A stretch of DNA of 64,000 bases, taken from assembly GCF_963921235.1 (NCBI RefSeq), contig NW_026948187.1, positions 3,162,001 through 3,226,000 of the forward strand, read 5' to 3'. Positions 24,428 through 62,615 of this stretch are shown in pieces. The position numbers were made by a program, and so were the translations under genes. Below the pieces are notes generated by a model. It did not search any database. It worked only from the letters and a program-made list of their open reading frames with translations, and was not told where the DNA came from. The DNA comes from Mobula hypostoma. Its lineage: Eukaryota. The number at the start of each line of letters is the position of its first letter. Within the stretch, counting starts at the first letter, position 1.

Positions 24428-27400
24428 AGGAAAAATATGTTCCCAACAATGTGCCACGGGGCCCTCGAGAGGAAAAGACCCTATCCCAGAAGTATTGGTG
24501 GGACCCCGAGAGAGGGGACAGATGCAAAAGCCATACTGGACACGGGGTCGCAGGTCACATTACTGTACCAGTCATTGTACGATCAGTATCTGGCGCATTT
24601 ACCCCTGACACCTTTCAGTGCACTGGAAATTTGGGGTATCAGTAATGGTGATTACCCATACAATAGCTATTTGTCCGTGAAACTGGAGTTCCTGGAAGCT
24701 GAGGTGGGGGTGTCTGAAGCACATGAGGCCCTGGTACTGGTTTACCCTGACACTGGTGAGACTGGGAGTGTGTCCATTCTGGTGGGGATCAACACCCCTA
24801 TTGTGCAGAGACTCTTCGGAGCCTGTAAGGAAAAGCCGAGAAAGACATTGGAGGCCCTGTCAGTGCACCCAGTGTTCTGAGCTGCTTTTGAGGAAGCGTG
24901 GGGTCGCCCGGGGCTGGACGCGGCGTGTGAACGAGTCACTGTGTGGTGTGCCCAGTCGAAGCCCAGGGTGGTACGGCCCGGTGAAGTAGCAAGGTGATGG
25001 GGATCCCTAGATTCCCGGGAGTGCCTGAGGGTGAAGCACTTTTAGTGCACACCTCGGAAGACCTTGAGGGGGCGTCGAGATTCCCTGCTGGGGTGCCGGT
25101 GAGACCCGAGTTGCAGAAGACCTCGGTGATACAGGCACGCAGGCCGGTGGTGATCGCCAGGAACACTACGAAACCAGGAGGTCACCTTTAAGCAAGGAAT
25201 GCCTCTGGCACATTTGTTCCTGGAGACGGTTATGCATAGCGCCACCGTGAGGCCAGTTGGGAAGAGCTGTCGGGAAAACGGCCTAAGGTGACAGCTGAAG
25301 CTTTTAACTTTGAGGCATCCCCTGTGCCGGAGGGTTGGAAGCGGAGGCTGGTGGAGAAGATGTTGACGATGACAGATATTTTTTCCATTAACGAATTTAA
25401 TGTGGGTTGTTCCAGGAGCACTCGCCACACCATATGGGTGACTGAGGATACTCTGTTTAGTGAAAGATCACAGAGACTGGCCCCTGCAGATGTGGAAGAC
25501 GTGCGGCAGCATTTGTGTAAATTGAAGGAGGCTGGGATCATCACAGAGTCCCGAAGCCCTTATGCGTCTCCTATCGTAGTGGCCTGGAAGAAGAATGGGA
25601 AGGTTCGTATGTGTGTGGACTATAGAACACTGAAGAGGTGCACGGACCCTGATCAGTACACAGTTCCCCGGGTCGAAGACGTGCTGGCCTGTCTGAGTGG
25701 GGCGAAGTGGTTTGGCGTGTTGGATTTGAGGAGTGGATATTACCAGATCCTGATGAGTAAGACCGATAAGGAGAAGACGGCCTTCATTTGCCCTCTGGGA
25801 TTTTACCAGTTCGGAAGGATGCCCCATGGCATATCGGTGGCCCTTGCCACTTTCCATAGGGTCATGGAGAAGACAGTGGGGGATATGAACCTGCTCGAAG
25901 TGCTCGTTTATTTGGATGACCTCATAGTATTTGGATCCACCTTGGAAGAACACGAAGTGAGACTAATGAAGGTGCTCGGCCGTCTGAAGCAGGAAGGGTT
26001 AAAACTTTCCCTGGACAAGTGTCAGTTCTGCCAGACGTCGGTTGGCTATGTTGGGCACATAGTCTAGCGAATGGAGTAGTTACAGACCCGGCTAAGATAG
26101 AAGCCGTGACCATGTGGCCGAGGTCCCAGACCGTGAGCGCTCTGCGCTCGTTCCTGGGGTTCTGTGGGTGCTACCGGAGATTCGTGAAAGGTTACGCCGG
26201 GGTGAGTCATCCCTTGAACCAGTTTCTGCGTGGCTACCCTCCCCTGGGACAGAGGGGGGAGGGGAGGAAAGGACAGGAGGATGGAGAATATTTGAACCCA
26301 TCAGAGCCCTCCGGACAGAGATGGGATGACAAATGTGAAACGGCTTTCCAGTCACTGAAGGAGATGCTGACTCAAGCGCCGGTATTGGCTTTTGCGGACC
26401 CCCGATTGCCCGACGTGCTACACACCGATGCCTGCCATGAGGGCTTGGAGGCCGTCTTGTATCAGGATCAGGGCGCTGGCCTGAGGCCTGTGGCGATTGT
26501 CAGCTGGAGTTTGTTGCCATCGGAGAGAAACTATCCCCCTCCCACAAGTTGGAGTTTCTGGCGTTGAAATGGGTGGTGGTGGATAAGCTGAGTGACTATC
26601 TCTACGGGGCCAAGTTTGAGGTGCGGACAGACAACAACCCGCTCACCTACATCCTGACCTCGGCGAAACTGGATGTCACAGGCCATCGGTGGTTGGCAGC
26701 CTTGTCTGTAAATGATTTCAACCTGAAGTACCGCCCCGGGAGCCGGAATATCGATACGGATGCTCTGTCCCGACGGGGGCATGAGGAACTGAGGAGGACG
26801 AGGAGAGGGAGAGTCTTCCTGCATCCGGGGTGAAGGCGATGTGCCAGTCTGCTGTCACCGTGCAGGTTGAGGAGAAGGAGAGGCCAGAACGAGAAGTGGA
26901 TTCATTCGGGGCATCCGATGCTGCCTTGCCCCTAGTTTACTGTGATCTGACTGTTCTGAAGACACGCAGCTGCCGGAGTTAAGCCCTGGGGAAGTGGCTG
27001 CCGCTCAGGGAGATCACACAGGCATTTGCCGTGTCTGGCACGTCGTGAAAGAGGGGGATGTGACAGGCGGAGAAGGCTAAATACGTTTCAGTGTGTCTGC
27101 TACTGAGAGAATGGCGTCGGTTGAGGTTGAAGAACCAGATGTTATAACGGGGAACGTCACCCCCGGACCGACCGCGCTGTTGGCAGCTGGTCCTGCCTGA
27201 GAAGTATCGGAAGGTTGTGTTGAAGTCTCTCCATGATGACTCCCGACATTTGGGTGTGGAAAAGACCTATGGATTGCTCAAGGATCGGTTTTATTGGCCC
27301 CGAATGAGGTCGGAGGTTGAAGAGTACTGCAAGTCCTTCATTCGTTGCATAAGACGGAAGACGCTGCCCGGGCAGGCTGCCCCTTTGTCCCACTAGCAGA

Positions 27401-31918: not shown

Positions 31919-33708
31919 TCATGAGTGCTGTTTGGAATTTGTTGTTTTCATTGGATCTACAGTCCGGTGCTGGTCGCTGATTGCAAATCCAAGCGTGGAG
32001 TCTTTTCGATTGTAGCACTGATTTTTGCTAATGGAAGATGAATCCAACATATTACAGAGGCCTCTGTACTCCGCACAACAGCTGGTTTTCGTAATGAACA
32101 CAAACACTGATCTGCCGTTGTTTTTCACTTGCTCCCTGAATCTGGACTGAGTCGCCACATAAATAAATGTGTTTGTGCAGCAGCTTAAAGATCTCAGCAA
32201 AAATCCAACTTTATAAAATATATATTCAGAATCATTCCATTCGCCTCCTGTTCCTGTTATCTGATAATAGAGGAACTGTGAAAAAGTTGTCAGCCACAGG
32301 GTGATGAAGCTTCCGGAGAGGGTGAGAAGTAAGATCACAGACCTCCTCCTTCTCTCCATCTCCGGGTCACTGCGGTTCTCCGCCTTGCTCTGACCCCTCA
32401 GCCCCTTACGGACGCGACTAGTCACTGAAATGTGTCTGACTGTCAGAGCGTTGAACAGCAGAATCACTGCGAAAGGCAGCAATGAAGTTAGTACCGTGTC
32501 AAACCAGTCAGATCCCTTCCACCCCGGATCAGTGAAGTAACTTAGTTTTATAACATTGAACCACGGTACGTTGTTAATGATTTCTCGCGGTTCAAGCCGG
32601 AAGTGGAAGGGAATGTTTTTCAAATAGAACAACACGGCAGTTGCTGCCAGAACCGCGGCCGCTGTTTTCCCGGTGCAATACTTTGCTTTCAGCTTATGGC
32701 AATAAAGGGAGACAAAGCGATCCAATGTGAAAGTGACAGTGAACCCGACAGAACAGTCTACGGCGACACGGGTCAAGACAACTCTCGCACTCTCCACGGG
32801 AGTAATGTTCAGGACACTCACTGGGAAATAATAAATGCTGATCCGAGACAAAATTACCTCAAAGATAACGACCATCAGATCTGCCGTTGCCATGGCCACC
32901 AAATAGCGAGTGGTGCAAGTGGCCAGACCGCACTTCCTCTGTGACAGGATTGTAATCGACAATATACTCACTAGAAAAACAGAAGTGAGAGGCATTATGG
33001 ATTACAATACATACTTTCAAGAAGTAAAGCCATTGATATATTTAATCAACGAAAACAAACAAAAACTTTGCCCCGGAAGAGTCGATACAGTTTGAGATAA
33101 ATACCTATATCTCTGGATACCGACAATTCAAGTTCTGGGGAATATGGAGGGAGAAAGCGTGTAACCAAAGCAACTGGACACCTTTTACAGCAAGAAGACC
33201 TTGAGAGGGAAGACAAAGTTGTTCAGAAGAAAACACTTTCATTACATGATTACTGTCGCACTGAATACATTTCTGTTTTCATGTGAACTCTATTAGGTGT
33301 CCGTCAAATGAACTGAACAACGTGAACCGTCTCAGTAAAGCCTTCCGATCACTTATCTTTCCTGAGCTGGAGTACGCCAGTGTCGAAAGCGTCAGTGAAG
33401 GGGCTGCTTCGACTTTCAGGTTTACGGTACGTTTAATGCAGTGCTTTGATTCCTGTGACTGAAAGTAATATATAAACAGTGATGGTAACAGTGTGATTGA
33501 ACGAAGTGATATCACCGCACGTGGCTTTGGAAGCTCCTCGCCGATCTCGAAGCCTATCATTTTACAAACCAAACCAAACTCAGAGTAACCTGCACAAAGT
33601 CGGCTAACTCACGGAGTTCCGGTGTTCTTTCATTAGCTTACCAGGAGCGCCAATCAAGACAATGCTGATGTAAAATATTTTCTCCATATGGTAATACGCT
33701 TCAAGCAT
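31919..33708 (-). CDS. GPR139/GPR142-like class A GPCR #1, two exons (33708-33642, 32970-31919), about 372 aa, apparently intact
   Basis: Exon 1 MLEAYYHMEKIFYISIVLIGAP then G|gtaagc; acceptor tttttctag; phase-1 intron of 671 bp. Motifs MATADL, ITPV, TLDRFV, KLKAKYCT, DPEMERRRRS, TLWLT, SCCTNTFIY, SRFREQ. Atypical: N1.50 is Ser, the TM3 Cys is absent (ITPVES), and the C-tail is longer than in the paralogs. Confidence 0.85.
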
Positions 33709-33781
33709 TTTTTTTCTCGCAATTCTCTGGTCCGTTTTAGTTGTAGGACAGTCTCTCTGATTGAAGTTGTACGCCAATGCA

Positions 33782-33810
33782 ATTTATATCCTTTATGAAC
33801 TCCAGTGGGA
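33782..33810 (-). promoter_or_regulatory. Putative core promoter of GPCR #1 (O/E-like site plus TATA)
   Basis: Minus strand TCCCACTGGA, 12 nt, TATAAAT; the TATA starts 80 nt upstream of the ATG. Confidence 0.55.
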
Positions 33811-34299
33811 CAATCGTTCACGACTTCTACCATTGCATTCTAAAAATGTGAGCAAACAGATGACGCCATCTCAGTTAAATCCCGACGTGCCAGGTTATGT
33901 AAATCTCTGAGATCGAATCAGAAGCCCCAGAACGGTCAATCCTGTCATACCAATCGGTTAAATTGCAGGAAATTAATTGCAGTAAATGGGATACCCTTTC
34001 AAATGCCAACATCCCATCGCCATTTCTCATATTATTAGAATGGTATTTCTTCTCCCGATCATTAACAAACTCGTTTTAGCCACCGACATCAGTGCATGAA
34101 CTATATAGCAATGCTATAGTTGAGTCCAGCATTGTGTGTCTGCTTCTTTGATATCTGGCAGATGCAGCATGCCTTTTTTTATGGCTTGCTACTCCACTGT
34201 AAAGTCACTTCCAGGGATGTGTACACCGAAAAAAAGCTTAAATCTTCACAAACAAACAAAAAGAAAATCACTCCCCTTTTCCTCTGATCCGCACTCTGA

Positions 34300-34445
34300 C
34301 TTCTTTCTTGTTCTCATCTGTTTATCACCTCCTACGGGGCCCCCTTCTCCTTCCCTTTCTTCTAGGGGTCCATTCCCTTCTCCATTTAGATTCCTCCCTC
34401 TGCAGAGCTTTATTCTTGCTCACCAGGCTTCAGCTACCAGCTTCT
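34300..34445 (+). repeat. Penelope-like terminal-repeat fragment
   Basis: Pyrimidine-rich ccccttctccttccctttct...tagattcct...cagag.ttt...ggcttca tract, recalled as a chondrichthyan Penelope 3' region. Confidence 0.4.
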
Positions 34446-35699
34446 TGCAGAGATCACAGAGGTGGCATTGACACCAATTCATGGAACTCGTGAAAGTGTG
34501 CGTCCCAGGAGAATAGAAACCTGCAGACCAAGGCATTGGTAGATCTTAAAACTAACCGTGCAGAACCGCCTTCTATTAAGACCCAGGTATCTCCGAGACA
34601 TCCGCTTTCGGGTTTCGCTGCCACCAGTGTAACGATATTAGCTTTTTACGCCAAAGCTGGGCGACTGGATGCAGTTACATTTACAAATCGAAAGCTTACT
34701 CCAGTGGAATGAGATGTGTAACATCTGAACGTCTTAAGCGATGTTTTGGGTAGTTAATCATTTTACTTATGTTGTGGGTCTTAATCCAGTAATCATTTTA
34801 ACCGAGCATACTCCAATTCAGCTGGTTGGAGGTAGGAAGGGGGCAACTATCAGGCAAATTCGACAAGTCTGGCTGTAACGTCAGAGTTGAAAGAGTTAGA
34901 AGTGCAATAATGCTCGCTGACAATTTAACTTATCGTGGTGAACCTTCTGATTGTCCGGTGACTGTAGTATAACAAAGGAAAGGAACATTCATTCTCATTT
35001 AAAATTAAAATAAAATGAGGAATGTACAGTCATGCGAATGAAAAGTTCCTATTGATGTATCTTTACTGACGGATCGTTGTCAATTCACGACGAAGCATGG
35101 TTTACAGGATCTGTTATATACGGAGAGGGTAAGAGTGCATACAGAAATTGTTATGAGAAATCTGCCTAAATTAATGTGTACATAAGTGGCAGAACTTGCT
35201 TCGAAGGCTTTTATTGTTAACGACCCAGACGAATATCCTGCGGGGACGACATTACGCTCAGATAGTATGTGTGGTTGTAAGAGTTTGGCTGAATAATTTC
35301 TACCATGTAAAGCCAGATCTTACGTTTCAGACCAGAGTAAAACCTTACAAGTCAGCACCCCTGTTGCGATATATATTAGAGGAGGCGAAATAAAACTCAT
35401 TTGGAGTAAACAGTAAAAACAAAAAACTGAAGGTTACAGGAAAAAAAAACAACAACAACAACCCTTGGAGGGAACAGGAAGACGGAGCAAGTTGTGGGGC
35501 TGGGAGCAGGGGATGGTAGTGGGTGTAAATGGAATCTACAGATGTGCCACCACAAAACTGGAAACTTTATATGAATAAAGCTTAGTCAAAGGCTTCGTCA
35601 AGGTACAGCAATAATATCAGAAGTTAGCAAAGGTATGAGATGGGGAAGTCTAAGTAATATGGGAAAATTCGTGAGTACAGATATATAGAGGATTTTAAT

Positions 35700-37415
35700 T
35701 AATAATTGTGCATGTGTGTTGCCGGAAGGTGGAAGGAAACTAGGAAATGTTTCAAAAAAAAAAGGTAATAATAAAGATATAGAAGATTATAAGGCTAGCA
35801 GGAAGGAGCTTAAGAATTAAATCAGGAGAACCAGAATGGGTCATGAGAAGACCTTGGCGGGCAAGATTAAGAAAACCCCAAAGCATTCTACAAGTATGTG
35901 AAGAGCAAGAGGATATGACATGAGAGAATAGGGCCAATCAAGTGTGACACTGGAGAAGTGTGTATGGAAACGGAGGAGAGAGCAGAGTAATTAATGAATA
36001 CTTTGCTTCAGTATTCTACGGAAAATAATCTTGGCGATTGTAGGGATGACCTACAGCAGACTGAAAAGCTTGATCGTATAAATATTAAGAAAAACGATAT
36101 GTTGGAGCATTTGAAAAGCATTAAGTTGGTTAAGTCACCAAGACCGAACAAGATGTACCCTAGGCTACTGTGGGAAGCGAGGGAGGAAGCTTCTGAGCCT
36201 ATGGCGATGAACTTTCAATCACCAGTGAGGACGGGAGATTTTCCGGAGCATTGGACGGTTGAAGATGTTGTTCCTTTATTCAAGAAAGGGAGTAGCCATA
36301 GCTCAGGAAATTACAGACCAGTGAGTCTTTCTTCAGTGGTTGGTAAGTTGATGGAGAAGATCCTGAGAGGCAGGATTTATGAACATTTGGAGAGGCATAA
36401 TATGATTGGGAATAGTCAACATGGATTTGTCAAAGGCAGGCCGTGGCTTACGAGCCTGATTGATTTTTATTGACGATGTGAATAAATAGATTGATGAAGG
36501 TAGAGCATTAAATGTAGTGTATATATATTTCAGCAAGGCGTTTCTTAAGGTACACCATGGAAGGCATATTGAGAAAGTAAGGAGACATGGGAGGCAAGAG
36601 GACCTTGCTTTCTGGATTCAGAACTGGTTTTCCCACAAAAGACAAAGTGTAGTTGTAAATGGTTCATATTCAGCATGGAGGTCGGTGACCAGTGGTGTGC
36701 CTCAGGGATCTGTTCGTGGACCCCTTCTCTTCTTGATTTAAAAAATGATCTGAAAGAGGAAGTGGAGGGATGGGTGAGTAAATTTGCTGATGACACAATG
36801 CTTGAAGTTGTGGATAGTGTGGAAGATCGTCAAGGTTTAAACGGGACATCGATATGAAACAAAACTGGGCTGAAAAGAGGCAGATGGAGTTCAACCCAGA
36901 TAAGTGTGAGGTGTTTCATTTTGTTATGTCAACCATGATGGCAGAATACAGTATTAATGGTAAGACTTTGGTACTGTGGATGATCAGACGGATCTTCGGG
37001 TCAGGGTCCATAGGACACTCAAAGCTACTGCTCATGTTGACTCTGTGGTTAAGAAGGCATACCGTGCCTTGGCCTTCATCAGCTGTGGGATTGAGTTCAA
37101 GAACCGAGAGGTAATATTGCAGCTATATAGGGCCTTGGTCGGACCTCAGTTGGAGTACTGTGCTCAGTTCTGGTCACCTCATTACAGGAAGGATGTGAAA
37201 ATATAGAAACAGTGCCGAGCAGATTTACAAGGATATTGCCAGGATTGGTGAGCATGCGTTATGAGAATAGGTTGAGTGAACTTGGTCTTTTTTCCTTGGA
37301 GCCACGGAGTATGAGAGGTGACCTGTGCTATATTCTGCCATTGAGAGACATTGATCGTGTGGGTAGTCAGAGGCTTTTTTTTCCCCCAGCGCGGAAGTGA
37401 CTAACACAAGAGGGA
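35700..37415 (+). mobile_element. CR1 LINE ORF2, degenerate
   Basis: GNYRPVSLSSVVGKLME, GVPQGSV, SKFADDT, LEYCAQFWSP. Confidence 0.92.
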
Positions 37416-37514
37416 GCCACAGGTGAGAGCTGAGTGCCAGGTGGGGACCAAAGGTGGACTAACCAACTTAAAAAGGACGCGACATGTTCCTCCACCAGAG
37501 ATGCTGCCAATCCC

Positions 37515-39230
37515 TGATACCCCATACATCCCTAATACAAAGTCGGCATGGTTTCCTTAAGGGAAAATCTTGCCTGTCGAACCTGTTGGAATTTGTTGAG
37601 GATATTAAACATTCGGTACCTAAAGGTGACGCAGTGAATTTATAGCAGGCAGCGAGTGCCCATCCTCCTAATCTGTCTGAGTCCCTCTGCAGCCTACCGG
37701 GTTCCTGAACACTACCCTTCCCTCCACCAATCTCTGTATCATCTACCGTCTCAATCATTGAGATAGAACATAAACAGAAACGGTCCCAGCCGCAACCCCT
37801 GTGGAACACACACTTGCAGGCAACCAGAAAAGGAGCCTTTTATTCCCACTCGCTGCCTCCTACTTGTCAGTTAATGCTCTAAACAGGCCAGTAACTTTCC
37901 TATAATATAACCGGGCCTTAACCTGGTAAGCAGCCTCATGTGTGGCACCTTGTCAAAGGCCTTATGAAAGTCTCAATATCCACGTCCACTGCGTCCCCGT
38001 TAGTATGGCATCATTAATATCCTCAAGAAATTCCAACAGGTTCATCAGACAAAATCTTCCCTTTAGGAACCACGCCGACTTTGCCCTACCTTGTTTTGTG
38101 TGTCGAAGGACTTCATAACTTCATCCTTGACAAATGACTCCAAAATTTTAGCAGCCACTGCTGTCAGGACAACTGATCCACAATTTCCTTTCTGCTGTCT
38201 TCCTGCTTTCTTAAAGAGTACAGCCACATTTCCAATTTTCCAGTTCTCTGCCAGAGTCCACTTAATTGTGAAAAGATAATTACTAATCCCTACACAATCT
38301 TGAGAGCTACTTGAGTCATAACCCGAGAGTGCAGTTCACATGGTCCGGGGGAGTTATGCACTATGAGATCTTTCAGCTTTTTGTGCGCACTCTGCCTTGT
38401 TATAGTAACTGCAATCATGCCCCCCACTCACAGCCTTTAACATCTGGCGCAAAGCTCGTACTTTCCGCTGTGAAGTGTTCTGCAAAATATTCATTTAGTG
38501 CATCTGCCAACTCCGTACCCCTCGTTATCTTTTCTTTGGCCTCATTTCCAGGTCTGCAGCATCATACTAATGAGTCACTTTCCTCCACTGCTCCTGGTTC
38601 ACGACATATTTGCCTTTATTAACAAAAGTTTCAGTTCATGAGTCAGGAAGTACTGCTGCAGCTTTATAAAAGTTTGGTCAGGTTGCATCTGGGATATTGC
38701 ATCTCGTTTCGGTCGCCCCATTGAAGGAAGATGCCGAGCCTTCGGAAAGGGCATAGAAGACTTTCAACAGGAGGAGTTTAGGAGGAGATCTAAACGGAGA
38801 AGTTGCACAATTTTGTATTGTTCTTCGCAGAGTGCTGGAAGCGAAACGGAGACTGAAATGTTTATCCGAGTCGTAAATAAAGTAGACAGTCAGTATCTTT
38901 CTCAGAGCATCAAATACCCAATACCAGAGGGCATGCAGTTAAGGTGAGAGGGGAAAATATTCAAAATACATGTGCAGGAAGTAATTTAGAAGAAAATAAA
39001 ACAAAGAGTTGTGGGGTTCTGGAATGGAGTTCTGGGGTGGAGCTGGAGGTCGGTGAAACGGTGGCATTTATGAGGCTCTTAGGCAAGGAAACACACAGAA
39101 AACGAAGCGATATAGACAACTTGCAGGGAGATGGATTAATTTAATTAGGCATCAGTGGCTTAATTACGTCAGCCCAACATCACAGACCAAAGGGCGCCTT
39201 CATGTCCTGCACTGTTACAGGTTCTAACTA
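37515..39230. mobile_element. Old CR1 fragments in mixed orientation
   Basis: Short plus piece at 37520-37640, minus pieces at 37650-38550 (DDTEIGG...LQRDSDRLGGW), plus 3' end at 38600-39230. Confidence 0.7.
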
Positions 39231-39554
39231 GATAAATGATCACCGACTAAGGACAGTTTCTTTTCCTCTCCGTCCTGAATTTCTATTCCTTCATGATGAA
39301 ACTATGTCCCATGGTAACAGAATCCTAATTGAGGGGAATCATCACTGTAATCGGTCGGAATATTCTCAAAGGATCGATCAATTCTCCTCAAAATTCCAGA
39401 GAATACCGGCCTGGCTCACACAATTTCTCCTCACATACCACCCTGCCATCCCTGGAGCCAGTGCGGACAGTGTGAGCAATAATCCCTACACTCTTGGTGC
39501 TGCAGGGATGACTTTACTGTGGAAATGCGACGAGAGCGGCAAATGATAATTTGA

Positions 39555-41990
39555 GTGGGAAGCTCATACTGTAAAGGGGCTGGATGGTTTGGAGTTTGTT
39601 AAATATGGGCAGGGTAGTTTTTTTTTGTTTGTTTTGTTTTTTTTGCAGCAATACATAGAGGTACCAACTAGAGAAGGGACAGTGTTGGATCTCCTGTTAG
39701 GGAGTGAGATAGGTCAGGTGACGGAGGTTTGTGTTGAGGAACACTTCGGCTCCAGTGATCACAATGCTATTAGTTTCAACATAATTATGCAGAAGGATAG
39801 GTCTGGACCCAAGGTTGAGATTTTTGATTGGAGAAAGGCTAACTTTGAGGAAATGCGAAATGATTTAGAAGGAATAGATTGGAACAATTTGTTTTATGGG
39901 AAGAATAGAATAGAGAAATGGAGGTCATTTAAAGGTGAAATTTTGAGAGTACAGAATCTTTATGTTCCTGTTAGGATGAAAGGAAAGGCTGAAAGTTTGA
40001 GAGAGCGATGGTTTTCAAGGGATATTGGAAACTTGGTTGGGAAAAAGAGAGATATCTACAATAAATACAGGCAGCATGGAGAATATGAGGTGCTCGAGGA
40101 ATATAAAGAATGTAAAAATAATCTTAAGAAAGAAATTAGAAAAGCTAAAAGAAGATATGAGGTTGCTTTGGCAAATAAGGTGAAAATAAATCCCAATGGT
40201 TTCTACGGTTATATTAATAGCAAAAGGATACTGAGGGATAAAACTTATCCCTTAGAGAATCAGAGTGGACAGCTATGTGTGGAGCAAAAAGAGATGGGAG
40301 AGATTCTGAACAATTTATTTTCTTCGGTATTCACTAGGGAGAAGGACATTGAATTGGGTCAAATAAGAGAAGCAGGTAGGGAAGTTATGAAAACTATGAT
40401 GATTAGAGTAGAGGAAGTACTGGAGCTTTTAAAGAATATGAAAGTGAATTAGTCTCCGCGTCCTGACAGGGTATTCCCGAGGAACTTGAGGGAAGTTAGT
40501 GTGCAACGAGCAGGGGCTCTGACAGAAATATTTCAAATATCATTAGAAACGGGTATGGTACCGGAGGATTGGCGCATTGCTCATGTTGTTCCATTGTTTA
40601 AAAAGGATTCTAAGAGTAAACCTAGCAATTATCGACCTGTGAGCTTGACGTCAGTGGTAGGTACATTGATGAAAAGTATTCTTATGGATGGTATATATAA
40701 TTATCTGGATAAACAGGGTCTGGTTAGGAACAGTCAACATGGAGTTTTGTGCGGAAGGTCATGTTTGACAAATCTTATTGAATCTATATGGACTTCAGTA
40801 AGGTCATTAACGAAGTCCCACACGGAAGGTTAGTTGGAAGGTTCAATCGTTAGGTATTAATATTGAAGTAGTAAAATGGATTCGGCAGTGGCTGGATGGG
40901 AGACGCCAGAGAGTGGTGGTAGATAACGGTTTGTCAGATCGGAGTTCCGTGACTAGTGGTGTGCTCAGGGATCTGTACTAGGTCCAATGTTTTTTTTTGT
41001 CATACACAATAATGATTTGGATGATGGGGTGGAAAATTGGATCAGTAAGTATGCAGATGATACTAAGATAGGTGGAGTTGTGGATAATGACGTAGGTTTT
41101 CAAAGCTTGAAGAGAGATTTAGGCCAGTTAGAAGAGTGAGCTGAAAGATGGCAGATGGAGTTTAATGCTGATAAGAGTGAGGTTCTACACTTTTGTAGGA
41201 CTAATCAAAATAGGACATACATGGTAAATGGTAGGGCATTAAAGAATGCAGTAGAACAGAGGGATCTAGGAATAATGGTGCATAGTTCCCCGAAGGTGGA
41301 ATCTCATGTGGATAGAGTGGTGAAGAAAGCTTTTGGTATGCTGGCCTTTATAAATCAGAGCATTGAGTACAGGAGTTACCATGTAATGTTGAAGTTCTAC
41401 AATGCATTGGTGAGGCCAAATTTGGAATATTGTGTACAGTTTTGGTCACCGAATTACAGGAAAGGTGTCAACAAAATGGAGAGAGTCCAGAGAAGGTTTA
41501 CTGAAATGTTGCCTGGGTTTCATCACCTAAGTTACAGAGAAAGTTTGAACAAGTTAGGTCTTTATTCTTTGGAGCGTAGAAGGTTGAGGGTGGACTTGAG
41601 AGCGGTATTTAAAATTATGAGGGGGATAGATAGAGTTGACGTGGATAGGCTTTTTTTTTCCATTGAGAGTGGGGGAGATTCAAACAAGAGGACATGAGTT
41701 GAGAGTTAAAGGACAAAAGTTCAGGGGTAACATGAGGGGTAACTTCTATACTCAGAGAGTGTTAGCTGTGTGGAACGAGCTTCTAGCAGAAGTGGTTGAG
41801 ACAGGTTCGATGTTGTCGTTTAAAGTTAAACTGGATAGATATATGGACAGGAAAGGAATGGAGGGTTATGGGCTGAATGCAGGTCGGTGGGACTCGGTGA
41901 GAGTAAGAGTTCTTCACGGACTAGAAGGGCCGAGATGGCCTGTTTCTGTGCTGTAATTGTCATATGGTTATATATGGTTATGTGGTTATA
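39555..41990 (+). mobile_element. 5'-truncated CR1 LINE with TATGGT-type tail
   Basis: PTREGTVLDLLL, SSDHNAI, NYRPVSLTSVVG, LEYCVQFWSP; tail catatggttatatatggttatgtggtta; small internal deletion near 40785. Confidence 0.93.
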
Positions 41991-41999
41991 ATATTCAAA

Positions 42000-42480
42000 A
42001 TGCATTCTCACCAGAACCCAATTAGACACTTCCTGTTCCCCAGTCATTCTGCTTCATAGGACAAAATCAAGTTTGTTTCCCTTAATATTTGTAGTACCTG
42101 AATGTTAACTCTCAGTGAATTATTCAAAATGCTCCTCACGTCCCTCTGAAAGATGACCTCCGTCCCCATATAAAAATGGCTTTTCCTACCTTGTTCTCTC
42201 GGAATGGTTGGCCTCAAGTCATCCCGCACTTTGTACATCTGCCAGGTCCTCACTCATTCACTTCTGCCTGCGTCCCCGGACCCACTCTGTATCCTTCTCA
42301 CTACTGATCCTGCCGCCCAGCTCTGTAACACCAGCAGACATTGATAACATCGCACATCCAAATCAGTGATGTAGACTGTGAACAGCTGGGGTCTCAGCTC
42401 CAATCCCTGATTCACCCTACTCGTCACAGATTCCCAAATCGAAAGTGGCGTATTTATTCCCTCTCTCTGTCTTTGAACTG
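42000..42480 (-). mobile_element. Old CR1/L2-type RT fragment
   Basis: Reverse strand shows ...gggattggagctgagaccccagctgttcacagtctacatc (G..LGPQLFT.YI-like) and RTWQM. Confidence 0.5.
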
Positions 42481-43084
42481 CTGACTAATTTTAAGTCTGC
42501 ACAAGTACACCAGAACCTTATTTGCTTATTATAAACTTTCTAATATTCCACCAACAACACATACATCAGTTCGTAATGCTCCAACTGTTTCTAATGTCCA
42601 GAACACACACTGACTCTGCCAACCCTACTGCTGCAATCCTCCCAGCACCGTGTCTGGGCATTTGGGATCTGGGTCACTCTCGCTACCTATAGGACACTGT
42701 GGTACAGAATACAATGAAAATACTGAACATGTGTGGTTCAGTGTAATAGTAGAATGTGTATCTGGACTGGACTCAGTGTGGGACTGAATGCCTTCGGTCT
42801 GAGACTGTGGAACTGATGAGCTGTCAGTATCCCTGTTCTTTGAAACACACCTTCGATGCGAGAGATGCTCGTTAACTTGGGTATCGACAGGAAGGAATAT
42901 TGCAGTCTTTCCCTGCGGGAAGAAGAAGGAAACTGGGTCAGTGAGACAGAGTCAAAACGTCGAAGGTTCTGTGAAGAGGACGGCTTATGAAAGTCAACCT
43001 CTCCAGCAACATATCAAAATGTTTGACGGACTCAGCGAAGTTTCTCTAGCACTTAGTGTGTTCTCACCTTCATTTCCAGGATCT

Positions 43085-43433
43085 NNNNNNNNNNNNNNNN
43101 NNNNNNNNNNNNNNNNNNNNNNNNNNNNNNNNNNNNNNNNNNNNNNNNNNNNNNNNNNNNNNNNNNNNNNNNNNNNNNNNNNNNNNNNNNNNNNNNNNNN
43201 NNNNNNNNNNNNNNNNNNNNNNNNNNNNNNNNNNNNNNNNNNNNNNNNNNNNNNNNNNNNNNNNNNNNNNNNNNNNNNNNNNNNNNNNNNNNNNNNNNNN
43301 NNNNNNNNNNNNNNNNNNNNNNNNNNNNNNNNNNNNNNNNNNNNNNNNNNNNNNNNNNNNNNNNNNNNNNNNNNNNNNNNNNNNNNNNNNNNNNNNNNNN
43401 NNNNNNNNNNNNNNNNNNNNNNNNNNNNNNNNN
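43085..43433. other. Assembly gap (349 N)
   Basis: Run of N about 400 bp upstream of GPCR #2. Confidence 0.98.
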
Positions 43434-43698
43434 AGGAGGAGGTGAAACACTGAAAATTTTAAACCGCTGGGTCAGAAATTAGTACGGTGTCGGTGAAATC
43501 TGTTTACAGATTAATAATTAACCAACAAAAACATGAACCCTGTAAATATGGCTGCTGCGACAGAAAGCTCAGATCTTGTCATAATTCCCACCGCTAACGT
43601 AATACCCAATAATTTGGATATATTTCTATTCAATCTGCCCAATATTTACATCAGAATCAATGGTGTTGAATAAAAGTGTTTGCTCAAGTAATTTGAAC

Positions 43699-43754
43699 TA
43701 ATGACGTTAGTCGGGGTATAACCGTATCTCTCGAGACTGCTCCTTTGTATAAAT
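43699..43754 (+). promoter_or_regulatory. Putative core promoter of GPCR #2 (homeodomain site, O/E-like site, TATA)
   Basis: TAATGA (43699-43704), TCTCTCGAGA (43727-43736), 11 nt, TATAAAT (43748-43754); ATG at 43837. Confidence 0.6.
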
Positions 43755-43836
43755 CAGGGACGTTTTGAAAGCACCAGCTCAGATTTTCTGCCGGCGCTGT
43801 GAATTCAAAAGCATCAGATCACAAATTCGCACTGAA

Positions 43837-45859
43837 ATGAGTTATCCAGTCATCCTGAGAATAGGGGAGGTTTACTATCCTTTCATTTCAGCCTTAGGAA
43901 TTCCCGGTAAGCCGCCGTATCAGCTGCTGTAGGTGGGAATTGAAGTTGAAATCCATTGTTGTAATTGTTTCTGTCGCTGGATTCCACTGCCACATGTCCA
44001 GTCCCAGTCTGCAGCATTTCAGGAAGGGAATGGAAAGATCAGGAATGTAGATTTGGGGATCTGGATCTAAAAACAAACCGATGGTGGAATTCAGCGATTC
44101 TTGATTTCAATGGTTCAGGCAGAGTTCTCCCAGTTGCTTCTGTTGAATAATGTGATGTTCGTGATTATCTGCTTTTGGTCGTGGAGTAGCTATACTGAAA
44201 TCACAAAATAGTATGTCTATGCAGCTCCCCGTGTTTATATGGACGGATTGTCTGCATTTGTATGTGAGCGGTCTTGTGAGGTGCAATAATCAAACCATCG
44301 ACTGGTAGTAACTTTTTAGTAAATGTGAGGAATTCCATTTGCAGCATTAAACTTGTGGATTTTTAACATATGTGTGCGCTGTGACTGAATGTGAAGCAGT
44401 TGATGGACAACTCAATGAAGTCGTTGTTGAGCCAATTATCACAACAGACGTGTGGCTTCATAGTTATCAACACTATGAAATGTATTATATATTATCTACA
44501 TCTGACACCGATACAGTTATCTAAAAGAGACATCGAGTTGGCTACTGGACGATGAATTCCTCTCCCCTGCTTGATAGTTGGAACTATCCCGCAATCAGGA
44601 TGCGGATGTATTCATTTTATGTCACGAAATGCGGAGGCGCCAGTAGAAAATATTCCATCCACTATGGACTCTGAGGAGGTAAATACCCAGTTTTCACATC
44701 CCGCTGCCACTTCACATTTCGGTCACCAGTAAGGAATCCGTACACAAAATATATTGATTTTATTTTACTGTGTAACGTCCTTCTTTGTCTCCTCCAGATC
44801 TGCGCCCTCTTTGGAATCTTCCTTCACTAAACGCGTCAATGACACGGAAGTATGACGGTATCCGCTCACATTGCTGCACTAGCCTCTGCTCAGTGTTTTT
44901 TCAACTTGCTGTTCCCTGTCTCTCTTTCAGCGAACCTGCTGGCCATTGTGAATGTGTCCCGGGGAAAGTGCGGTCTGTCCAAATGCGTCAATCGTTACAT
45001 GGTGGGAATGGCCGCCGCCGATCTCTTGCTGGTTATCTCCTATCCGCTGCTGACGTGGACTGCTTGGATTTATTTTCCCGGATCATTCCGGTTCATCACT
45101 CCTGTGTGCAGATTGTGTGGGTGGTTAATTTTTGCGAGCACTGCGACCTCAGTCTGGCTGACTGTCGCTTTCACCTTTGATCGATTTGTGGCTATTTGCT
45201 GTGAGAAGCTGAAAACAAAACATTGCACCGAGAGAACGGCCGCTGTGGATATCGGGACAGTGAGTGGGCTGGCCTGTTTGGAGAGTGTCCCCTGGGGATT
45301 TGTATACGAGCCTTTGGTAATAATGGATAGTGTTCCCTGGTATTGTGTTCATACATCGAGCTACAAAGGAGCTCCCTCATGGGCGGCGTTTGCAATGTTT
45401 CACCGCATTTTAACCCCTTGTGTCCCATTCTTTCTGATCTTGCTGCTCAATATTCGAACTGTTAGGAAGATTCTAGCAGCCCGCCGAGCCCGCCGAGCCC
45501 GCCGGGGGCTCCGGGGACGAAGGAATGGAGAGAATGACAAGGACCGGGAGATGGAGAACCGACGCAAATCCATCGTTTTGCTCTTCAGCATATCCGCTAG
45601 TTTCATACTGTGCTGGATAACACAGCAGGCATTTTATATCTATCAACGGATTTCAATGAGTTTTGTTTATTATTCTGTAACAGATCCCCGCTACCTTATT
45701 GAAGACATATCGGGAATGCTGCAGATTCTCAGTTCCTGAACCAACATTTTTATTTACGCCCTGACCCAGAACAAATTCCGAGAAGAACTCAGGGATATGC
45801 TGAAATACCCAATGAATCGGATTGTGGACCAAATTAAACGTTGGAAATATATACTTTAA
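43837..45859 (+). pseudogene. GPR139/GPR142-like GPCR #2, two exons (43837-43906, 44931-45859), in-frame TGA in TM7
   Basis: Exon 1 MSYPVILRIGEVYYPFISALGIP then G|gtaagc; acceptor tctctttcag; ANLLAI..SRGKCGLS, MAAADL, TFDRFVAICC. TGA at 45737-45739 is followed in frame by TNIFIYALTQNKFREELRDMLKYP to TAA at 45857-45859. Confidence 0.88.
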
Positions 45860-59160: not shown

Positions 59161-61320
59161 ACTCTAACAGATTTTCGGGAAGTCTGATAAATTTAGAACT
59201 CACGCCAATGACATTAAATCTGTGATAAGTCTGAAGGAACGAGCTGTTCCAGAGTTTTAAGTCTACAGATCCCCATAGGTAAAACACTAAAGAATATGAG
59301 CTGTATTTCCCCCGCGTTTCTTTACCCAGACCGGGGTGAGAACAGAACGGCTTCCTGGATGTAACAGATTCCCGGAGCCACTGAACGATGAATTCCCAGC
59401 CCAACATTTCCATATAAACTGAAATGCATGCTTCCTTTAATTACACGAGACACGGTGCATAAGAACAGAGACATGATATTGTTGTACATCGTTCTACTCA
59501 ATTATCTGTGTAATCATTGGAGTTTCATGGAACAAAACGCCAGACACAGTTCCACTGTATCTCGGTACACGTGAGAGGACTAATCCGAAACCAGCACGAA
59601 ACCGATGAGCCGGATAGGTGTGTGACCGCTGTAGCGAAACACCCTGAGGCTGAGAGGATCGCGATTATCGACAGATGATAACCAGTTTGTAATTACCCCA
59701 CGCAAGGAGGCGTCAGCATCCAGGCACCACAGATGGTTCTGAAGTACAGCGAACACAGAGAATATCGGATCGCTTTGTTCCTCACCGGGTGAGTTGCTGC
59801 AGATCTGAAACCGATTGCGTGAGCACCCGGCGGCGGCAGAGAGTCTGACAGTTCAGAAGGATCTGGGTGAACATTTGGATAGAAGGGGCGTAAAAGTTTC
59901 GCCATCCACTTCTAGTCAGGGAGAACACCTTACCGGAAATGACGTGCCGCCGTTTCGTACTCTGTGAACTTGCGAACCTGTGATATCCAAGTAGCCGTTC
60001 ACTTCTCACTGTGGTCCGGACAAGGGAACTCTATGTGAGCGGCCTGATCTGTCCACGGACTGTGACTCCCCCATGGTGGGGAGACTGATTCAGATATGAT
60101 CTCCAGGTGGATGGAATTGGAATCGGTTTAATATTGTCACATGTACTGAGATGCTGTGAAAATTCAGTCCTGTGTACAGTTCAAATCATTATATAGAGCC
60201 GTGAAGTAGAATAAACAGAAAAAGGTCAAACAGTTACAATTCTGAATAAAATGTAACAACCACAGAAACACTGAACAACAAGTCTACAAAAAAGGAGGAA
60301 AATCACAACGGAATAAACTGGGAGGTGAAGAGTCCATATTATCGTGCTCGGGATCATTTCAACAATATTTTATCAGCAGAGCAGAAGACCTGCCCGAGCC
60401 TGTAGTTATGTGTTTTCTGTACTCTGTAGCTTTACTCGCGCGTTCCTGATCTTTTCCAGAAAACAGTTCCTCGGTCAGTTCTCCTTCCTCTCTGCTCAGA
60501 GAGACACATTCAGTGACACAGTTTCGGTCTAATCCGGCCTCTGTGATAGAGGCAACCCGTAGAGTTTCGGCTCTCTTCAACCAGCCGCGTTCGATAAAAC
60601 CTGATAGCGGTAGTGCTCTAAAAAAAAATTGTTAAGTTTATCACCACTCAGGACCGTAAAAACGAACAATGTAGCTGCGACAGACAGACAAAGCTGGAAG
60701 ATCTGTACCAACACCTGTTCTTTTACCCAGGCCCTGCAATAGCCCTGTCGGGAGAGACTGCAAATGCAATGCAAATCCCTCGACATGTCTGTCCCCGGAT
60801 GTCGCTGCGGCCAAGTTAATACTAAAAATAACCGAGAGCAAGTGCACCCCACATTGCGGATTGGCATTCGCATTTCCTCACCACTAACATCGATTTTTCA
60901 AACTTCTCTTAACATTGTGATTGCATGATGTTTCTGGAATGCTATGATTTATCAGAGCGATACCCGTGACAAGAGCTAATTTCCAGTATGACCTGCGAGC
61001 TGGTTGAACCGGACCGTTCGCACTCACTGTTAAACGGGAGAGGTTTCACGGTGGAGCGGAGCAGTACGGCTGAAACAGGCGAACAGAACTGTGGCGCTGA
61101 TCTACACTAACAAATATAGGTCGTTCCACTGGGGAAGAGAGGGGGGATATAAACTGGTGAATGCAGGAAAAAAAGATTAAAATGATCGTCAGTGAACCAG
61201 AGCGAGCAATCATGCTGGCGAGGAATGAGATAAACAAGGAGAACGCCTGGCTTCATTGGTGCAGAGATTGTTTGCAATGGGTGGTGAATTATTTGGGCCA
61301 GGCAGGGAAACATCACTAAT

Positions 61321-62223
61321 TCATGACATCCTTGCAGCAATGAGAGCCAGGGGATGTTTTATCACGTCCTTCAGTTGCTCCCTGAACTTGGTCTGGGTGA
61401 CGGCGTAAAAAGCCGTGTTTGTGCAGCAGCTCAGAATCTGCAGCATCGAGCCCAGTCCTCGCAGAGAATCAGCAGGAAGCGTCACAGCAGAGAAAGCAGA
61501 CAGTCGGTTCCAAGCAGAATACACAGTGAACGGTGCCCACAGCAGGACGAAATTGCTAGAGATGATCAGCAGTAAAACGAGTGATTTTCTGCGGCTCTCC
61601 ATCTCCGGGTCTCTGGCACTCTGTCCCTTGTCAGCACGCCGGAGTCTCCTGCGCCCTCTGCTGGTGACTAAAACGTACCGGATGGTTAATCCATTCGTCA
61701 GGAGGACCAGCAGGAATGGGATTACAGGAGTCTAGAAGGTAATTAAATAAGTCAATTGACATTGCGACAAATAAAGACACATAATCTGCGGTATCTACAC
61801 AAATAAATGGAGCAATCAGCATTGCATAATATCCCGAGAGTCGAAAATACCAGTAAATGTTCCTTAAACAGCTGATCGCAGTCACTGTCCCCAGCATCAC
61901 AGCCGCAGTTCTCCCGGTGCAATATTTTGTTTTCAGCTTCTGGCAACAAATGGCCACAAACCGGTCAAATGTGAAAGTGACGGTGAACCAGACCGAACAA
62001 TCGGTGGCGGCGTAAAGCAGGACGGCGTGGATTTGACACACTGGTGTGTCCGCAGCCCAGATGAGAAGTTCAATTGGCGCGTAAATATTCGGAATCTTGT
62101 TCAGTATCAGGTCCAGGACAACAACCATAAGATCGGCCGCTGCCATGGCAACTAGGTAGCGAGTGACAACTCTGGAGAGACCGCACTTTCCTCTGGACAA
62201 GATTAAAATTGTCACCAGGTTCA
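61321..62223 (-). pseudogene. GPR139/GPR142-like GPCR #3, exon 2 with a 1-bp insertion; exon 1 not found in the window
   Basis: Acceptor cttcttgcag|TG AAC (VNLVTILILSRGKCGLS); TFDRFVAICCQKLKTKYCT. An extra base near 61732 shifts LL-TPVIPF; the second frame gives RDPEMESRRKS, LLWAP, LSCCTNTAFY, KFREQ, with stop at 61323-61321. Confidence 0.88.
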
Positions 62224-62615
62224 CTGCAAGAAGCATAAAACACAATCAGTGGAAATGGAACTTCAAATACGAAATCTACAGAATCTTGAATTCCATTAGA
62301 TAAATTTCCTCAACAATGACTGTTTAGATCAAGGGCAGACTCCCTCCTCTGATCATTATACGCTACTCTGCAAAAGTCTTTGGCAAACATATATATAGTT
62401 AGGTAGACTAAGCGTTTTGCACAATACCGTATTGTCAACGGAGAGCGGAGAACCAGGTTGCAAACATGGCGGAAGAAAATGATGTTGAAAATTATTGTCA
62501 ATTACAGAATGTCTCCCCGGTGCTTCCCGCTCCCTCCCCTCTCCCTCCCACTTTTCCCAACTACGATTCTCTCACCCTGACCCCTTCCCACTCTCAGTCG
62601 ACAACCGACACCCAT

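What the first reader, a model, noticed from the sequence alone, without database searches (positions are those of the whole stretch)
33782..43754. Same promoter module (O/E-like palindrome 11-12 bp before TATAAAT) ahead of two otherwise unalignable GPCR paralogs
Seen: GPCR #1 has TCCCACTGGA-N12-TATAAAT (33810-33782, minus). GPCR #2 has TCTCTCGAGA-N11-TATAAAT (43727-43754), preceded by TAATGA at 43699; a TAATTG lies further upstream of #1 (about 33974). The TATA starts 80 and 89 nt before the respective ATG, and the surrounding sequence shows no similarity. Established: EBF/Olf-1 binds TCCCNNGGGA-like sites, and O/E plus TAATNN homeodomain sites are characteristic of mouse odorant-receptor promoters. 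Inference: the family may be wired to an olfactory-neuron programme. EBF1-driven B-cell expression is an alternative. With n=2 and imperfect matches, chance is not excluded.
Basis: partly seen in the sequence, partly recalled or inferred. Interest (0 to 1): 0.72.

Follow-up and report, generated by a model that had tools for sequence, protein, structure and literature searches.

The report
Shared promoter of shark-ray receptor genes
The two matching motif pairs are real leftovers of one old TATA-type promoter shared by a large shark-and-ray orphan receptor family, but the element beside the TATA box only loosely resembles an olfactory (EBF) site and no data show where the genes are expressed.

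Summary
It is not a chance pair. The window is from Mobula hypostoma. Both genes are two-exon members of the elasmobranch-only "probable GPR139" expansion.

I recovered exon 1 and upstream DNA for 10 more family members (skate, sawfish, whale shark, zebra shark). All 12 promoters share one layout:
- an ATF/CRE-like box joined to TGTTTG, about 70 nt before the TATA box;
- an A/T-rich or TAAT box;
- a box at a fixed offset of -22/-21 from the TATA box;
- TATA(A/T)A;
- a CAGA initiator-like site about 30 nt further on;
- the ATG 61-92 nt after the TATA box.

An unbiased positional k-mer scan gives TGGAGA, not TCCCNNGGGA, as the shared core of the box. The TCCC half is kept only in the batoid clade that holds GPCR #1. 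There the box is TCCC-N3-GGAG, 1-2 mismatches from the EBF core. The palindrome of GPCR #2 is a decayed copy, and its relatives are poor EBF matches. TAATGA at 43699 is conserved in two relatives. TAATTG near 33974 is not.

No RNA evidence could be obtained, so the olfactory reading is untested. GPCR #2 carries an in-frame stop and a third paralog has a frameshift. The assembly gap lies outside both modules. The scan had already noted this family elsewhere in the genome (s1-142121, s1-142842, s1-143426).

The parts
33861..33868 (-). GPCR #1: ATF/CRE-like box TGGCGTCA. Family consensus is TGA(C/T)GT(C/A)A.
   Evidence: Aligned block in 12 promoters; its TG, GT and A columns are invariant or nearly so.
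33852..33858 (-). GPCR #1: forkhead-like TGTTTGC, 70 nt before the TATA box.
   Evidence: TGTTTG is exact in 7 of 9 representative promoters at -72 +/-4. The TGTTT columns are invariant in A1. There is a 10/10 match to GPCR #2.
33799..33812 (-). GPCR #1: proximal box TGTCCCACTGGAGT.
   Evidence: Offset -22 from the TATA box; 1 mismatch to the EBF core; 0 mismatches to TCCCNNNGGAG. The skate-trained matrix gives p=5e-4.
33782..33788 (-). GPCR #1: TATA box TATAAAT.
   Evidence: The TATA.A columns are invariant across 12 promoters.
33755..33760 (-). GPCR #1: initiator-like TCAGAG. The predicted start is the A at 33758, 30 nt after the first T of the TATA box. This is inferred, not mapped.
   Evidence: Read. 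A CAGA block aligns in the family.
33642..33708 (-). GPCR #1: coding part of exon 1 (22 codons plus 1 base); the gtaagc donor follows.
   Evidence: Exon-1 HMM E=8e-6. The spliced translation is open.
31919..32970 (-). GPCR #1: exon 2, holding the 7tm_1 domain. The frame is intact, but 11 of 79 family-invariant positions are changed.
   Evidence: Pfam 7tm_1 E=1e-11. 77% identity to the Hemitrygon akajei protein P0001. Departures are listed.
43677..43683 (+). GPCR #2: forkhead-like TGTTTGC, 71 nt before the TATA box.
43697..43705 (+). GPCR #2: homeodomain-like ACTAATGAC.
   Evidence: The same position reads ACTAATAAC in whale shark L007 and ACTAATGAT in skate L009. It is absent in L010 and shifted in L008.
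43727..43737 (+). GPCR #2: degenerate proximal box TCTCTCGAGAC. The core is TCGAGA, 1 mismatch from TGGAGA.
   Evidence: Offset -21; 2 mismatches to the EBF core. The skate-trained matrix gives p=0.05.
43748..43754 (+). GPCR #2: TATA box TATAAAT.
43778..43784 (+). GPCR #2: initiator-like CTCAGAT. The predicted start is the A at 43781, 33 nt after the first T of the TATA box (inferred).
   Evidence: Read. CTCAGAG lies at the same place in L007 and L008, and TCAGAG in L010.
43837..43906 (+). GPCR #2: coding part of exon 1 (23 codons plus 1 base); the gtaagc donor follows.
   Evidence: Exon-1 HMM E=0.012. The peptide resembles P0198 and P0173.
44931..45859 (+). GPCR #2: exon 2. An in-frame TGA at 45737-45739 replaces a family-invariant Cys in TM7. 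The frame continues to the TAA at 45857-45859. Probably a pseudogene.
61252..62224 (-). Third paralog: exon 2 only, with a frameshift near 61718-61731. No exon 1 or promoter is detectable up to the window end.
   Evidence: tblastn gives two frames. Neither the nhmmer promoter profile nor the exon-1 HMM gives a hit.
43085..43433 (.). Assembly gap. It lies between the two genes and outside both modules.

Best explanation
Both motif pairs are the proximal part of one ancestral promoter. Every member of this elasmobranch receptor family inherited it together with its short first exon.

The promoter is of the focused TATA-plus-initiator type. TBP/TFIID would sit on TATA(A/T)A and start transcription about 30 nt downstream. 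That predicts starts near 33758 on the minus strand and 43781 on the plus strand, with a 5' UTR of 50-56 nt.

Three upstream islands are kept under selection:
- an ATF/C-EBP-like box fused to a forkhead-like TGTTTG, about 70 nt before the TATA box;
- an A/T-rich or TAAT box;
- a box that ends 10-12 nt before the TATA box, roughly one helical turn.

The invariant core of that last box is TGGAGA(T/C), with TGTC a few bases upstream. It is most likely the site of a sequence-specific activator that works right next to the pre-initiation complex.

Shown here: the layout, the fixed spacing and the conservation across five species and two deep clades. Inferred: the start site, protein binding and the identity of the factor. 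EBF is one candidate, for the clade of GPCR #1 only.
For: - Twelve promoters from Mobula, Pristis, Rhinoraja, Rhincodon and Stegostoma share the layout. The TATA box lies 61-92 nt before the ATG in all of them.
- MAFFT alignment A1 has invariant or near-invariant columns in TGA.GT.A, TGTTTG, the T of TGTC, G.AG of TGGAGA, TATA.A and CAGA.
- In the unbiased positional 6-mer scan, TGGAGA with up to 1 mismatch falls in 8 of 9 representative promoters inside one 5-nt window at -18. The maximum under random shifts is 4-5. TGTTTG is exact in 7 of 9 at -72.
- A matrix trained on skate boxes only detects the box at the expected offset in the others: Mobula #1 5e-4, sawfish 2e-4, zebra shark 3e-3, skate L009 9e-3, whale shark 1e-2.
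- The boxes are islands. BLAST aligns only the exons between Mobula genes and their skate or shark paralogs.
- The two clades are separated by about 0.77 changes per amino-acid site, each with 100/100 support.
Against: - There is no transcript, start-site or chromatin evidence.
- The four small runs that hold pieces of the locus behave as genomic DNA. One contig runs unbroken from the intron through exon 1 and the TATA box to 128 nt upstream of it.
- Between Mobula #1 and its sawfish ortholog the promoter is 68% identical and the intron 67%. In orthologs, slow elasmobranch divergence alone could explain the similarity.
- Several skate promoters are recent duplicates and are not independent.
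- Identity across clades, with promoters anchored on the TATA box and no gaps allowed, is only 0.34 in the box against 0.27 in the background.
- GPCR #2 is probably a pseudogene, so its copy may no longer function.
Confidence: 0.75

Rival explanations
1. The box is a true O/E site. EBF-family dimers bind it, and together with a homeodomain site and the TATA box it drives expression in olfactory sensory neurons. That would make the family a hidden odorant-receptor repertoire. A variant of this reading has EBF1 driving expression in B cells.
For: - In the clade of GPCR #1 the box is TCCCGG(T/A)GGAGA or TCCCACTGGAG, 1-2 mismatches from TCCCNNGGGA at a fixed offset. TCCCNNNGGAG is matched with 0-1 mismatch in 6 of 7 promoters, against a background rate of 3e-4 per position.
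- The natural mb-1 EBF site AGACTCaaGGGAAT also has one imperfect half (PMC2394523).
- Mouse OR promoters are enriched for O/E, homeodomain, MEF2A and TBP motifs close to the start (PMC12547500). In one study, 78% had a conserved O/E site within 200 bp and 39% had a TATA match at -60 to -10 (PMC3247239).
- ACTAATGA is conserved in three clade-B promoters.
- Catshark canonical OR, TAAR and V1R families are tiny (PMC11979771), which leaves room for another receptor family.
Against: - The family-wide core is TGGAGA, which is not a GGGA half-site.
- The deviating base is always the first G of the GGGA half.
- The TCCC half is absent in clade B, where boxes are 2-3 mismatches from the core.
- EBF-core matches with up to 2 mismatches occur once per roughly 250 bp by chance.
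- The neighbouring boxes can equally be read as C/EBP, FoxA or HNF1 sites.
- There are no expression data.
Confidence: 0.17
2. The resemblance is passive inheritance. Slow neutral divergence, recent duplication or gene conversion among paralogs has preserved promoter sequence without any selection on the box.
For: Promoter identity (68%) equals intron identity (67%) between the Mobula and sawfish orthologs. Skate promoters L002, L003 and L005 align over their whole length. Duplicated promoter fragments exist in L001 and L006.
Against: Between clades and between genera, only the exons and the short boxes are recognisably similar. The boxes keep their distance to the TATA box across paralogs that predate the shark-ray split. 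The positional k-mer counts exceed every shifted control.
Confidence: 0.06
3. Pure coincidence: two unrelated imperfect palindromes happen to lie beside two TATAAAT strings.
For: The loose composite is common: 13 seen against 8 expected in the DNA examined, six of them unrelated to genes. The window has 13 TATAAAT against 8.7 expected.
Against: The same arrangement is found in 12 of 12 homologous promoters at the same offset and the same distance from the ATG. The matrix p-values are independent of the window.
Confidence: 0.02

Closest known systems
Mouse odorant-receptor proximal promoters (O/E site, homeodomain site, often a TATA box)
   Same: Both are compact promoters of a large clustered rhodopsin-class GPCR family. 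Both have a TATA box, a TCCC..GG(G/A)-type box and TAAT or A/T-rich boxes within about 100 bp of the start, in AT-rich DNA full of LINE elements.
   Different: Here the box sits at one fixed distance from the TATA box in every gene, because the promoter was duplicated together with the gene. Its conserved core is TGGAGA, not the O/E palindrome. An ATF/C-EBP-like plus forkhead-like block is equally conserved. Exon 1 is coding. No olfactory expression is known.
Canonical EBF/Olf-1 sites (palindrome TCCCNNGGGA; mb-1 site AGACTCaaGGGAAT)
   Same: One perfect TCCC half and an imperfect second half, as in the mb-1 site. From memory only, the OMP Olf-1 consensus TCCCC(A/T)NGGAG has the same TCCC-N3-GGAG form as the clade-A box. 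That paper is not held, so this could not be checked.
   Different: No member has both halves intact. The flanks are TG..GA rather than AT..AT. Clade-B boxes lack the C-run. Binding is untested.
Generic focused TATA-plus-initiator promoters of tissue-specific genes
   Same: A conserved TATA(A/T)A, a CA(G)A initiator-like site 28-35 nt downstream, a short 5' UTR and proximal activator boxes.
   Different: Nothing unusual in kind. The new point is that a whole lineage-specific receptor family keeps it.
Human GPR139 (the name these genes carry in databases)
   Same: Rhodopsin-class 7TM fold. Human GPR139 is the closest solved structure (7VUG).
   Different: The match is only 29 bits, E=4.5e-6. 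The best 120 relatives listed in each of two searches that carry a species name are all elasmobranchs. These genes are distant relatives, not orthologs.

Membership tests
O/E (EBF/Olf-1) binding site | Match to the palindromic core TCCCNNGGGA with both CCC/GGG halves | tested here: not met
   Mismatches at the fixed offset are 1 (GPCR #1), 2 (GPCR #2) and 1-3 in the ten relatives. None is perfect, and the first G of the GGGA half is always lost in clade A.
O/E (EBF/Olf-1) binding site | Both half-sites conserved across homologous promoters | tested here: not met
   The TCCC half is kept only in clade A. The de novo conserved core is TGGAGA.
O/E (EBF/Olf-1) binding site | Bound by EBF proteins | not testable with these tools
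   Needs EMSA, DAP-seq or ChIP.
Odorant-receptor-type promoter | O/E-like and homeodomain (TAAT) motifs within about 200 bp of the start | tested here: inconclusive
   There is an O/E-like box in clade A and a conserved ACTAAT(G/A)A in 3 of 5 clade-B promoters. The proximal promoter of GPCR #1 has no conserved TAAT, and TAATTG at 33974 is not conserved.
Odorant-receptor-type promoter | Expression restricted to olfactory sensory neurons | not testable with these tools
   No RNA run holds the locus. The candidate runs behave as genomic DNA, and the short public contigs are unspliced.
TATA-plus-initiator core promoter | TATA box conserved at a fixed place upstream of the first exon | tested here: met
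   Twelve of 12 promoters have TATA(A/T)A or a one-base variant 61-92 nt before the ATG, and the columns are invariant.
TATA-plus-initiator core promoter | Transcription starts 25-35 nt downstream of the TATA box | not testable with these tools
   Only an initiator-like CAGA at +30 to +33 is seen. There are no 5'-end data.
GPR139 orthologs | Close sequence relation to vertebrate GPR139 | tested here: not met
   29 bits to human GPR139. Pfam matches only the general 7tm_1 model. Every listed relative that carries a species name is an elasmobranch.

The most novel reading that the evidence does not exclude
The conserved promoter (TCCC..GGAG box, TAAT box and TATA box next to an ATF-like box) is the signature of an olfactory-neuron programme. 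On this reading the elasmobranch 'GPR139-like' expansion, hundreds of genes per genome, is a so far unrecognised odorant-receptor repertoire. It would compensate for the near-absence of canonical ORs in sharks and rays and use the same EBF/homeodomain logic as mammalian OR genes.
Probability: 0.12. Interest if true: 0.85.

Novelty: new member of a known kind. Interest (0 to 1): 0.5.

Why it matters
This receptor family is one of the largest gene expansions in shark and ray genomes, and I found no paper on it in the held library. Nothing is known about where it is expressed or what it senses.

A defined, family-wide promoter gives concrete handles:
- a predicted start site;
- three short boxes to mutate;
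- an exon-1 and promoter profile. This profile finds the true first exon where public gene models miss it.

With these, the question 'is this a chemosensory repertoire?' becomes directly testable by reporter assays, EBF binding assays and targeted RNA mapping.

If the olfactory reading held, it would change the view that the shark nose relies almost only on V2R receptors. If it fails, the result is still a tidy example of a promoter kept through hundreds of millions of years of birth-and-death evolution.

Tried and rejected
- **RNA evidence.** Two run searches gave no run on record as RNA. Contigs of the four 'RNA?' runs lie on intron, promoter and flanks without any splice joint, so they behave as genomic DNA. 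The short public contigs behind P0151 and P0037 are unspliced or hold exon 2 only.
- **Fetching promoters.** Hemitrygon and Cetorhinus assemblies were too large for DNA to be returned. All 12 look-ups are used.
- **Exon 1 of the third paralog and of the L002 minus-strand copy.** Neither the exon-1 HMM nor the nhmmer profile finds them. A TATAAAA at about 63434 with a ..CCTG|gt 90 nt downstream was considered and rejected, because the frame has a stop and the spacing is wrong.
- **Literature.** No paper links GPR139-like genes to elasmobranchs. Kudrycki 1993 and Wang 1997 are not held, and a search for the Olf-1 consensus string found nothing. The resemblance to TCCCC(A/T)NGGAG therefore rests on memory only.
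- **Other factors considered for the box and set aside as poorer or inconsistent fits:** STAT, E2F, RBPJ (GPCR #1 only), AP-2, CTCF, NF-kB, TALE half-site TGTC(A).
- **The bacterial promoter scan** is irrelevant to this organism.
- **The assembly gap** was not filled or looked up.

Full report
**Observation.**
- On the minus strand, TCCCACTGGA (33810-33801) is followed after 12 nt by TATAAAT (33788-33782). The ATG is at 33708.
- On the plus strand, TCTCTCGAGA (43727-43736) is followed after 11 nt by TATAAAT (43748-43754). The ATG is at 43837 and TAATGA at 43699.
- Each ATG opens a short exon of 22-23 codons ending ..CC(T/C)G|gtaagc in phase 1. It splices to the large exon that carries the Pfam 7tm_1 domain.

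**Assembly gap, tested first.** The only N runs are 2389-2568 and 43085-43433. The second ends 225 nt before the part of promoter #2 that matches the family profile (43658-43914). There is no N between 43434 and the end of gene #2. The gap touches neither module nor gene. Only the distance between the two genes, and whether they are truly neighbours, depends on it, and that stays unknown. I did not fill it or look it up.

**What the genes are.**
- A protein search with GPCR #1 returns 960 relatives, and one with GPCR #2 returns 1906. Every one of the best 120 listed in each search that carries a species name is from a shark, ray or skate. Nearly all are labelled 'probable G-protein coupled receptor 139'.
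- The window's own ORF lies on a 7,461,842-bp contig shared with Mobula hypostoma proteins, so the window is from that devil ray.
- The closest solved structure is human GPR139 at only 29 bits. The family is a distant, elasmobranch-specific relative, not GPR139 itself. Earlier scan notes on other windows of this genome say the same (s1-142121, s1-142842).
- The window holds a third paralog at 61252-62224 on the minus strand, with a frameshift.
- GPCR #2 has an in-frame TGA at 45737-45739 where the family has an invariant Cys in TM7.
- GPCR #1 is open but departs from 11 of 79 positions that are at least 95% conserved in 79 relatives. These include W98G and the F of the FDRF motif.
- So this is a birth-and-death cluster with decaying members.

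**Is the module more than chance?**
- Taken alone, it is not. EBF-core matches with up to two mismatches occur 262 times in the window against 260 expected.
- In 274 kb read on both strands, such a match 10-13 nt before a TATA-like site occurs 13 times against 8 expected. Six of those are unrelated to any gene.
- The two promoters show almost no pairwise similarity.

**More promoters.**
- DNA could be fetched for ten annotated relatives: seven from the skate Rhinoraja longicauda, and one each from the sawfish Pristis pectinata, the whale shark and the zebra shark.
- An HMM of the exon-1 peptide, applied to every possible splice donor, located exon 1 in each locus. This includes two loci where the public gene model had missed it.
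- A protein tree splits the twelve genes into two clades, each with 100/100 support. They are about 0.77 changes per site apart.
- Clade A holds GPCR #1, the sawfish gene and five skate genes.
- Clade B holds GPCR #2, the two shark genes and two skate genes.
- Clade B mixes sharks and batoids in a way that suggests its paralogs may be older than the shark-ray split, though the inner branches have less than full support.

**Result.** All twelve promoters have the same layout (and alignment A1). From 5' to 3':
- TGA(C/T)GT(C/A)A, an ATF/CRE or C/EBP-ATF-like box. It is weak in GPCR #2 and the whale shark.
- TGTTTG(C/T), forkhead-like, about 70 nt before the TATA box.
- An A/T-rich box. It reads CTATTTTTAA-like in clade-A skates and ACTAAT(G/A)A in GPCR #2, the whale shark and skate L009.
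- A box starting 22 or 21 nt before the TATA box.
- TATA(A/T)A.
- A CAGA initiator-like site 28-35 nt after the first T of the TATA box.
- The ATG, 61-92 nt after the TATA box.

**Statistics.**
- A positional scan of all 6-mers in nine non-redundant promoters puts TGGAGA (up to 1 mismatch) first. It occurs in 8 of 9 inside one 5-nt window at -18. Thirty controls with random shifts never exceed 5.
- TGTTTG is exact in 7 of 9 at -72.
- A 15-nt matrix built from the five clade-A skate boxes, scored at five allowed offsets against the window's own score distribution, gives these p-values:

| Promoter | p |
|---|---|
| GPCR #1 | 5e-4 |
| Sawfish | 2e-4 |
| Zebra shark | 3e-3 |
| Skate L009 | 9e-3 |
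| Whale shark | 1e-2 |
| Skate L008 | 0.048 |
| GPCR #2 | 0.051 |

- BLAST aligns only exons between Mobula genes and their skate or shark paralogs, so the boxes are islands in diverged DNA.
- One caveat: between GPCR #1 and its sawfish ortholog the promoter (68%) is no better conserved than the intron (67%). Orthologs alone say nothing about constraint.

**Is the box an O/E site?**
- EBF binds TCCCNNGGGA (PMC4312928) and tolerates one imperfect half, as in the mb-1 site AGACTCaaGGGAAT (PMC2394523).
- In clade A the box reads TCCCGG(T/A)GGAGA in skates, TCCCACTGGAG in GPCR #1 and TCCCCGTGCAG in the sawfish. These are 1-2 mismatches from the core (3 in L003), and the first G of the second half is always lost.
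- The pattern TCCC-N3-GGAG fits better: 0-1 mismatch in 6 of 7, against a background of 3e-4 per position. From memory, this is the form of the classical OMP Olf-1 consensus. I could not verify that, because the paper is not held.
- In clade B the C-run is missing. The boxes read TCTCTCGAGA, TTACCGGAGA, TCAGTGGAGA, TTCCTTTGTA and TCGCTGGAGA, which are 2-3 mismatches from the core.
- What all twelve keep is TGTC, a few bases, then TGGAGA(T/C). The palindrome in GPCR #2 is therefore incidental.
- The O/E reading applies at best to clade A.

**Homeodomain sites.** TAATGA at 43699 lies in ACTAATGAC, which is conserved at the same place in the whale shark and in skate L009. TAATTG near 33974 aligns to CAAGAAAT in the sawfish ortholog, so it is not conserved. 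AATT cores drift around in that A/T-rich block.

**Comparison with OR promoters.** Mouse OR promoters are AT-rich. They carry O/E motifs within a few hundred bp of the start, together with homeodomain, MEF2A and TBP motifs (PMC12547500). In one study, 78% had a conserved O/E site within 200 bp and 39% had a TATA match at -60 to -10 (PMC3247239). The parallel is suggestive. But the same boxes here can also be read as C/EBP, FoxA and HNF1-type sites, so motif content cannot name the tissue.

**Expression.**
- No expression evidence could be obtained.
- The four small runs that hold parts of the locus give contigs on intron, promoter and flanks with no splice joints.
- The short public contigs of relatives are unspliced.
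- No paper in the held library treats the family.

**Verdict.** It is an inherited, constrained TATA-type promoter with three upstream boxes. I put about 0.75 on 'conserved functional promoter with a proximal activator box of unknown factor'. I put about 0.17 on a true EBF site, and small weights on passive inheritance and chance. The finding is a new, useful description of a known kind of element. The exciting reading, a hidden odorant-receptor repertoire, stays possible at about 0.12.

Noticed in passing
window 45737-45739: In-frame TGA in GPCR #2 where 79 relatives have an invariant Cys (SCCTN motif, TM7). The frame runs on to the TAA at 45857-45859, so this is probably a young pseudogene or an assembly error.
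   Followed up: partly
window 61252-62224 (minus strand): Third family paralog, with a frameshift near 61718-61731. No recognisable exon 1 or promoter lies in the 1.7 kb upstream that the window still holds.
   Followed up: partly
window 31919-32970 (minus strand): GPCR #1 is open but changes 11 of 79 near-invariant family positions (W98G, FDRF to LDRF, C112Y, C138Y, P185S and others). It and its stingray ortholog lack the Cys pair C82/C161.
   Followed up: partly
window 33852-33868 (minus) and 43677-43683 (plus); L001-L010: An ATF/CRE or C/EBP-ATF-like box (TGATGTCA, TGACGTAA, TGACGCAA, TGATGTAAT) lies directly before a forkhead-like TGTTTG.
   Followed up: partly
L001 about 9866-9875, L004 and L005 at the equivalent aligned position: Clade-A skate promoters carry CTATTTTTAA or CTAATTTTAA, which fits the MEF2 consensus YTA(A/T)4TAR recalled from memory. 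Mobula #1 has only ACATTTTTAG there.
   Followed up: no
L006 9039-9238: Decayed duplicate of the sawfish promoter and exon 1, about 800 bp upstream of the live one. The box is kept (TGTCCTTGTGGAGG) but the TATA box is deleted.
   Followed up: partly
L001 2542-2609: Duplicated promoter fragment that breaks off in a poly-G run right after TTCCCGCGG. This is either a segmental duplication or an assembly artefact.
   Followed up: no
L002 10001, L009 10001; proteins P0122-P0128: Public gene models of this family often miss the true first exon. P0040 starts in a spurious exon. P0235 is called intronless although exon 1 ends at about 9388. The Mobula models have unrelated N-termini. This suggests little RNA support at annotation time.
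   Followed up: partly
window 20912-22033 (plus strand): ORF with 13 tandem C2H2 zinc fingers (Pfam zf-C2H2, E=3e-88) lying between LINE fragments.
   Followed up: no
window 7703-9304, 25288-26067, 55271-56950 (plus strand); 51404-52195 (minus strand): Four reverse-transcriptase ORFs (Pfam RVT_1). The receptor cluster lies in LINE-rich DNA.
   Followed up: no
window 32296-32469: In low-coverage runs of the same species this part of exon 2 collects many near-identical short contigs with variants. That fits a very high copy number of the family in the genome.
   Followed up: no
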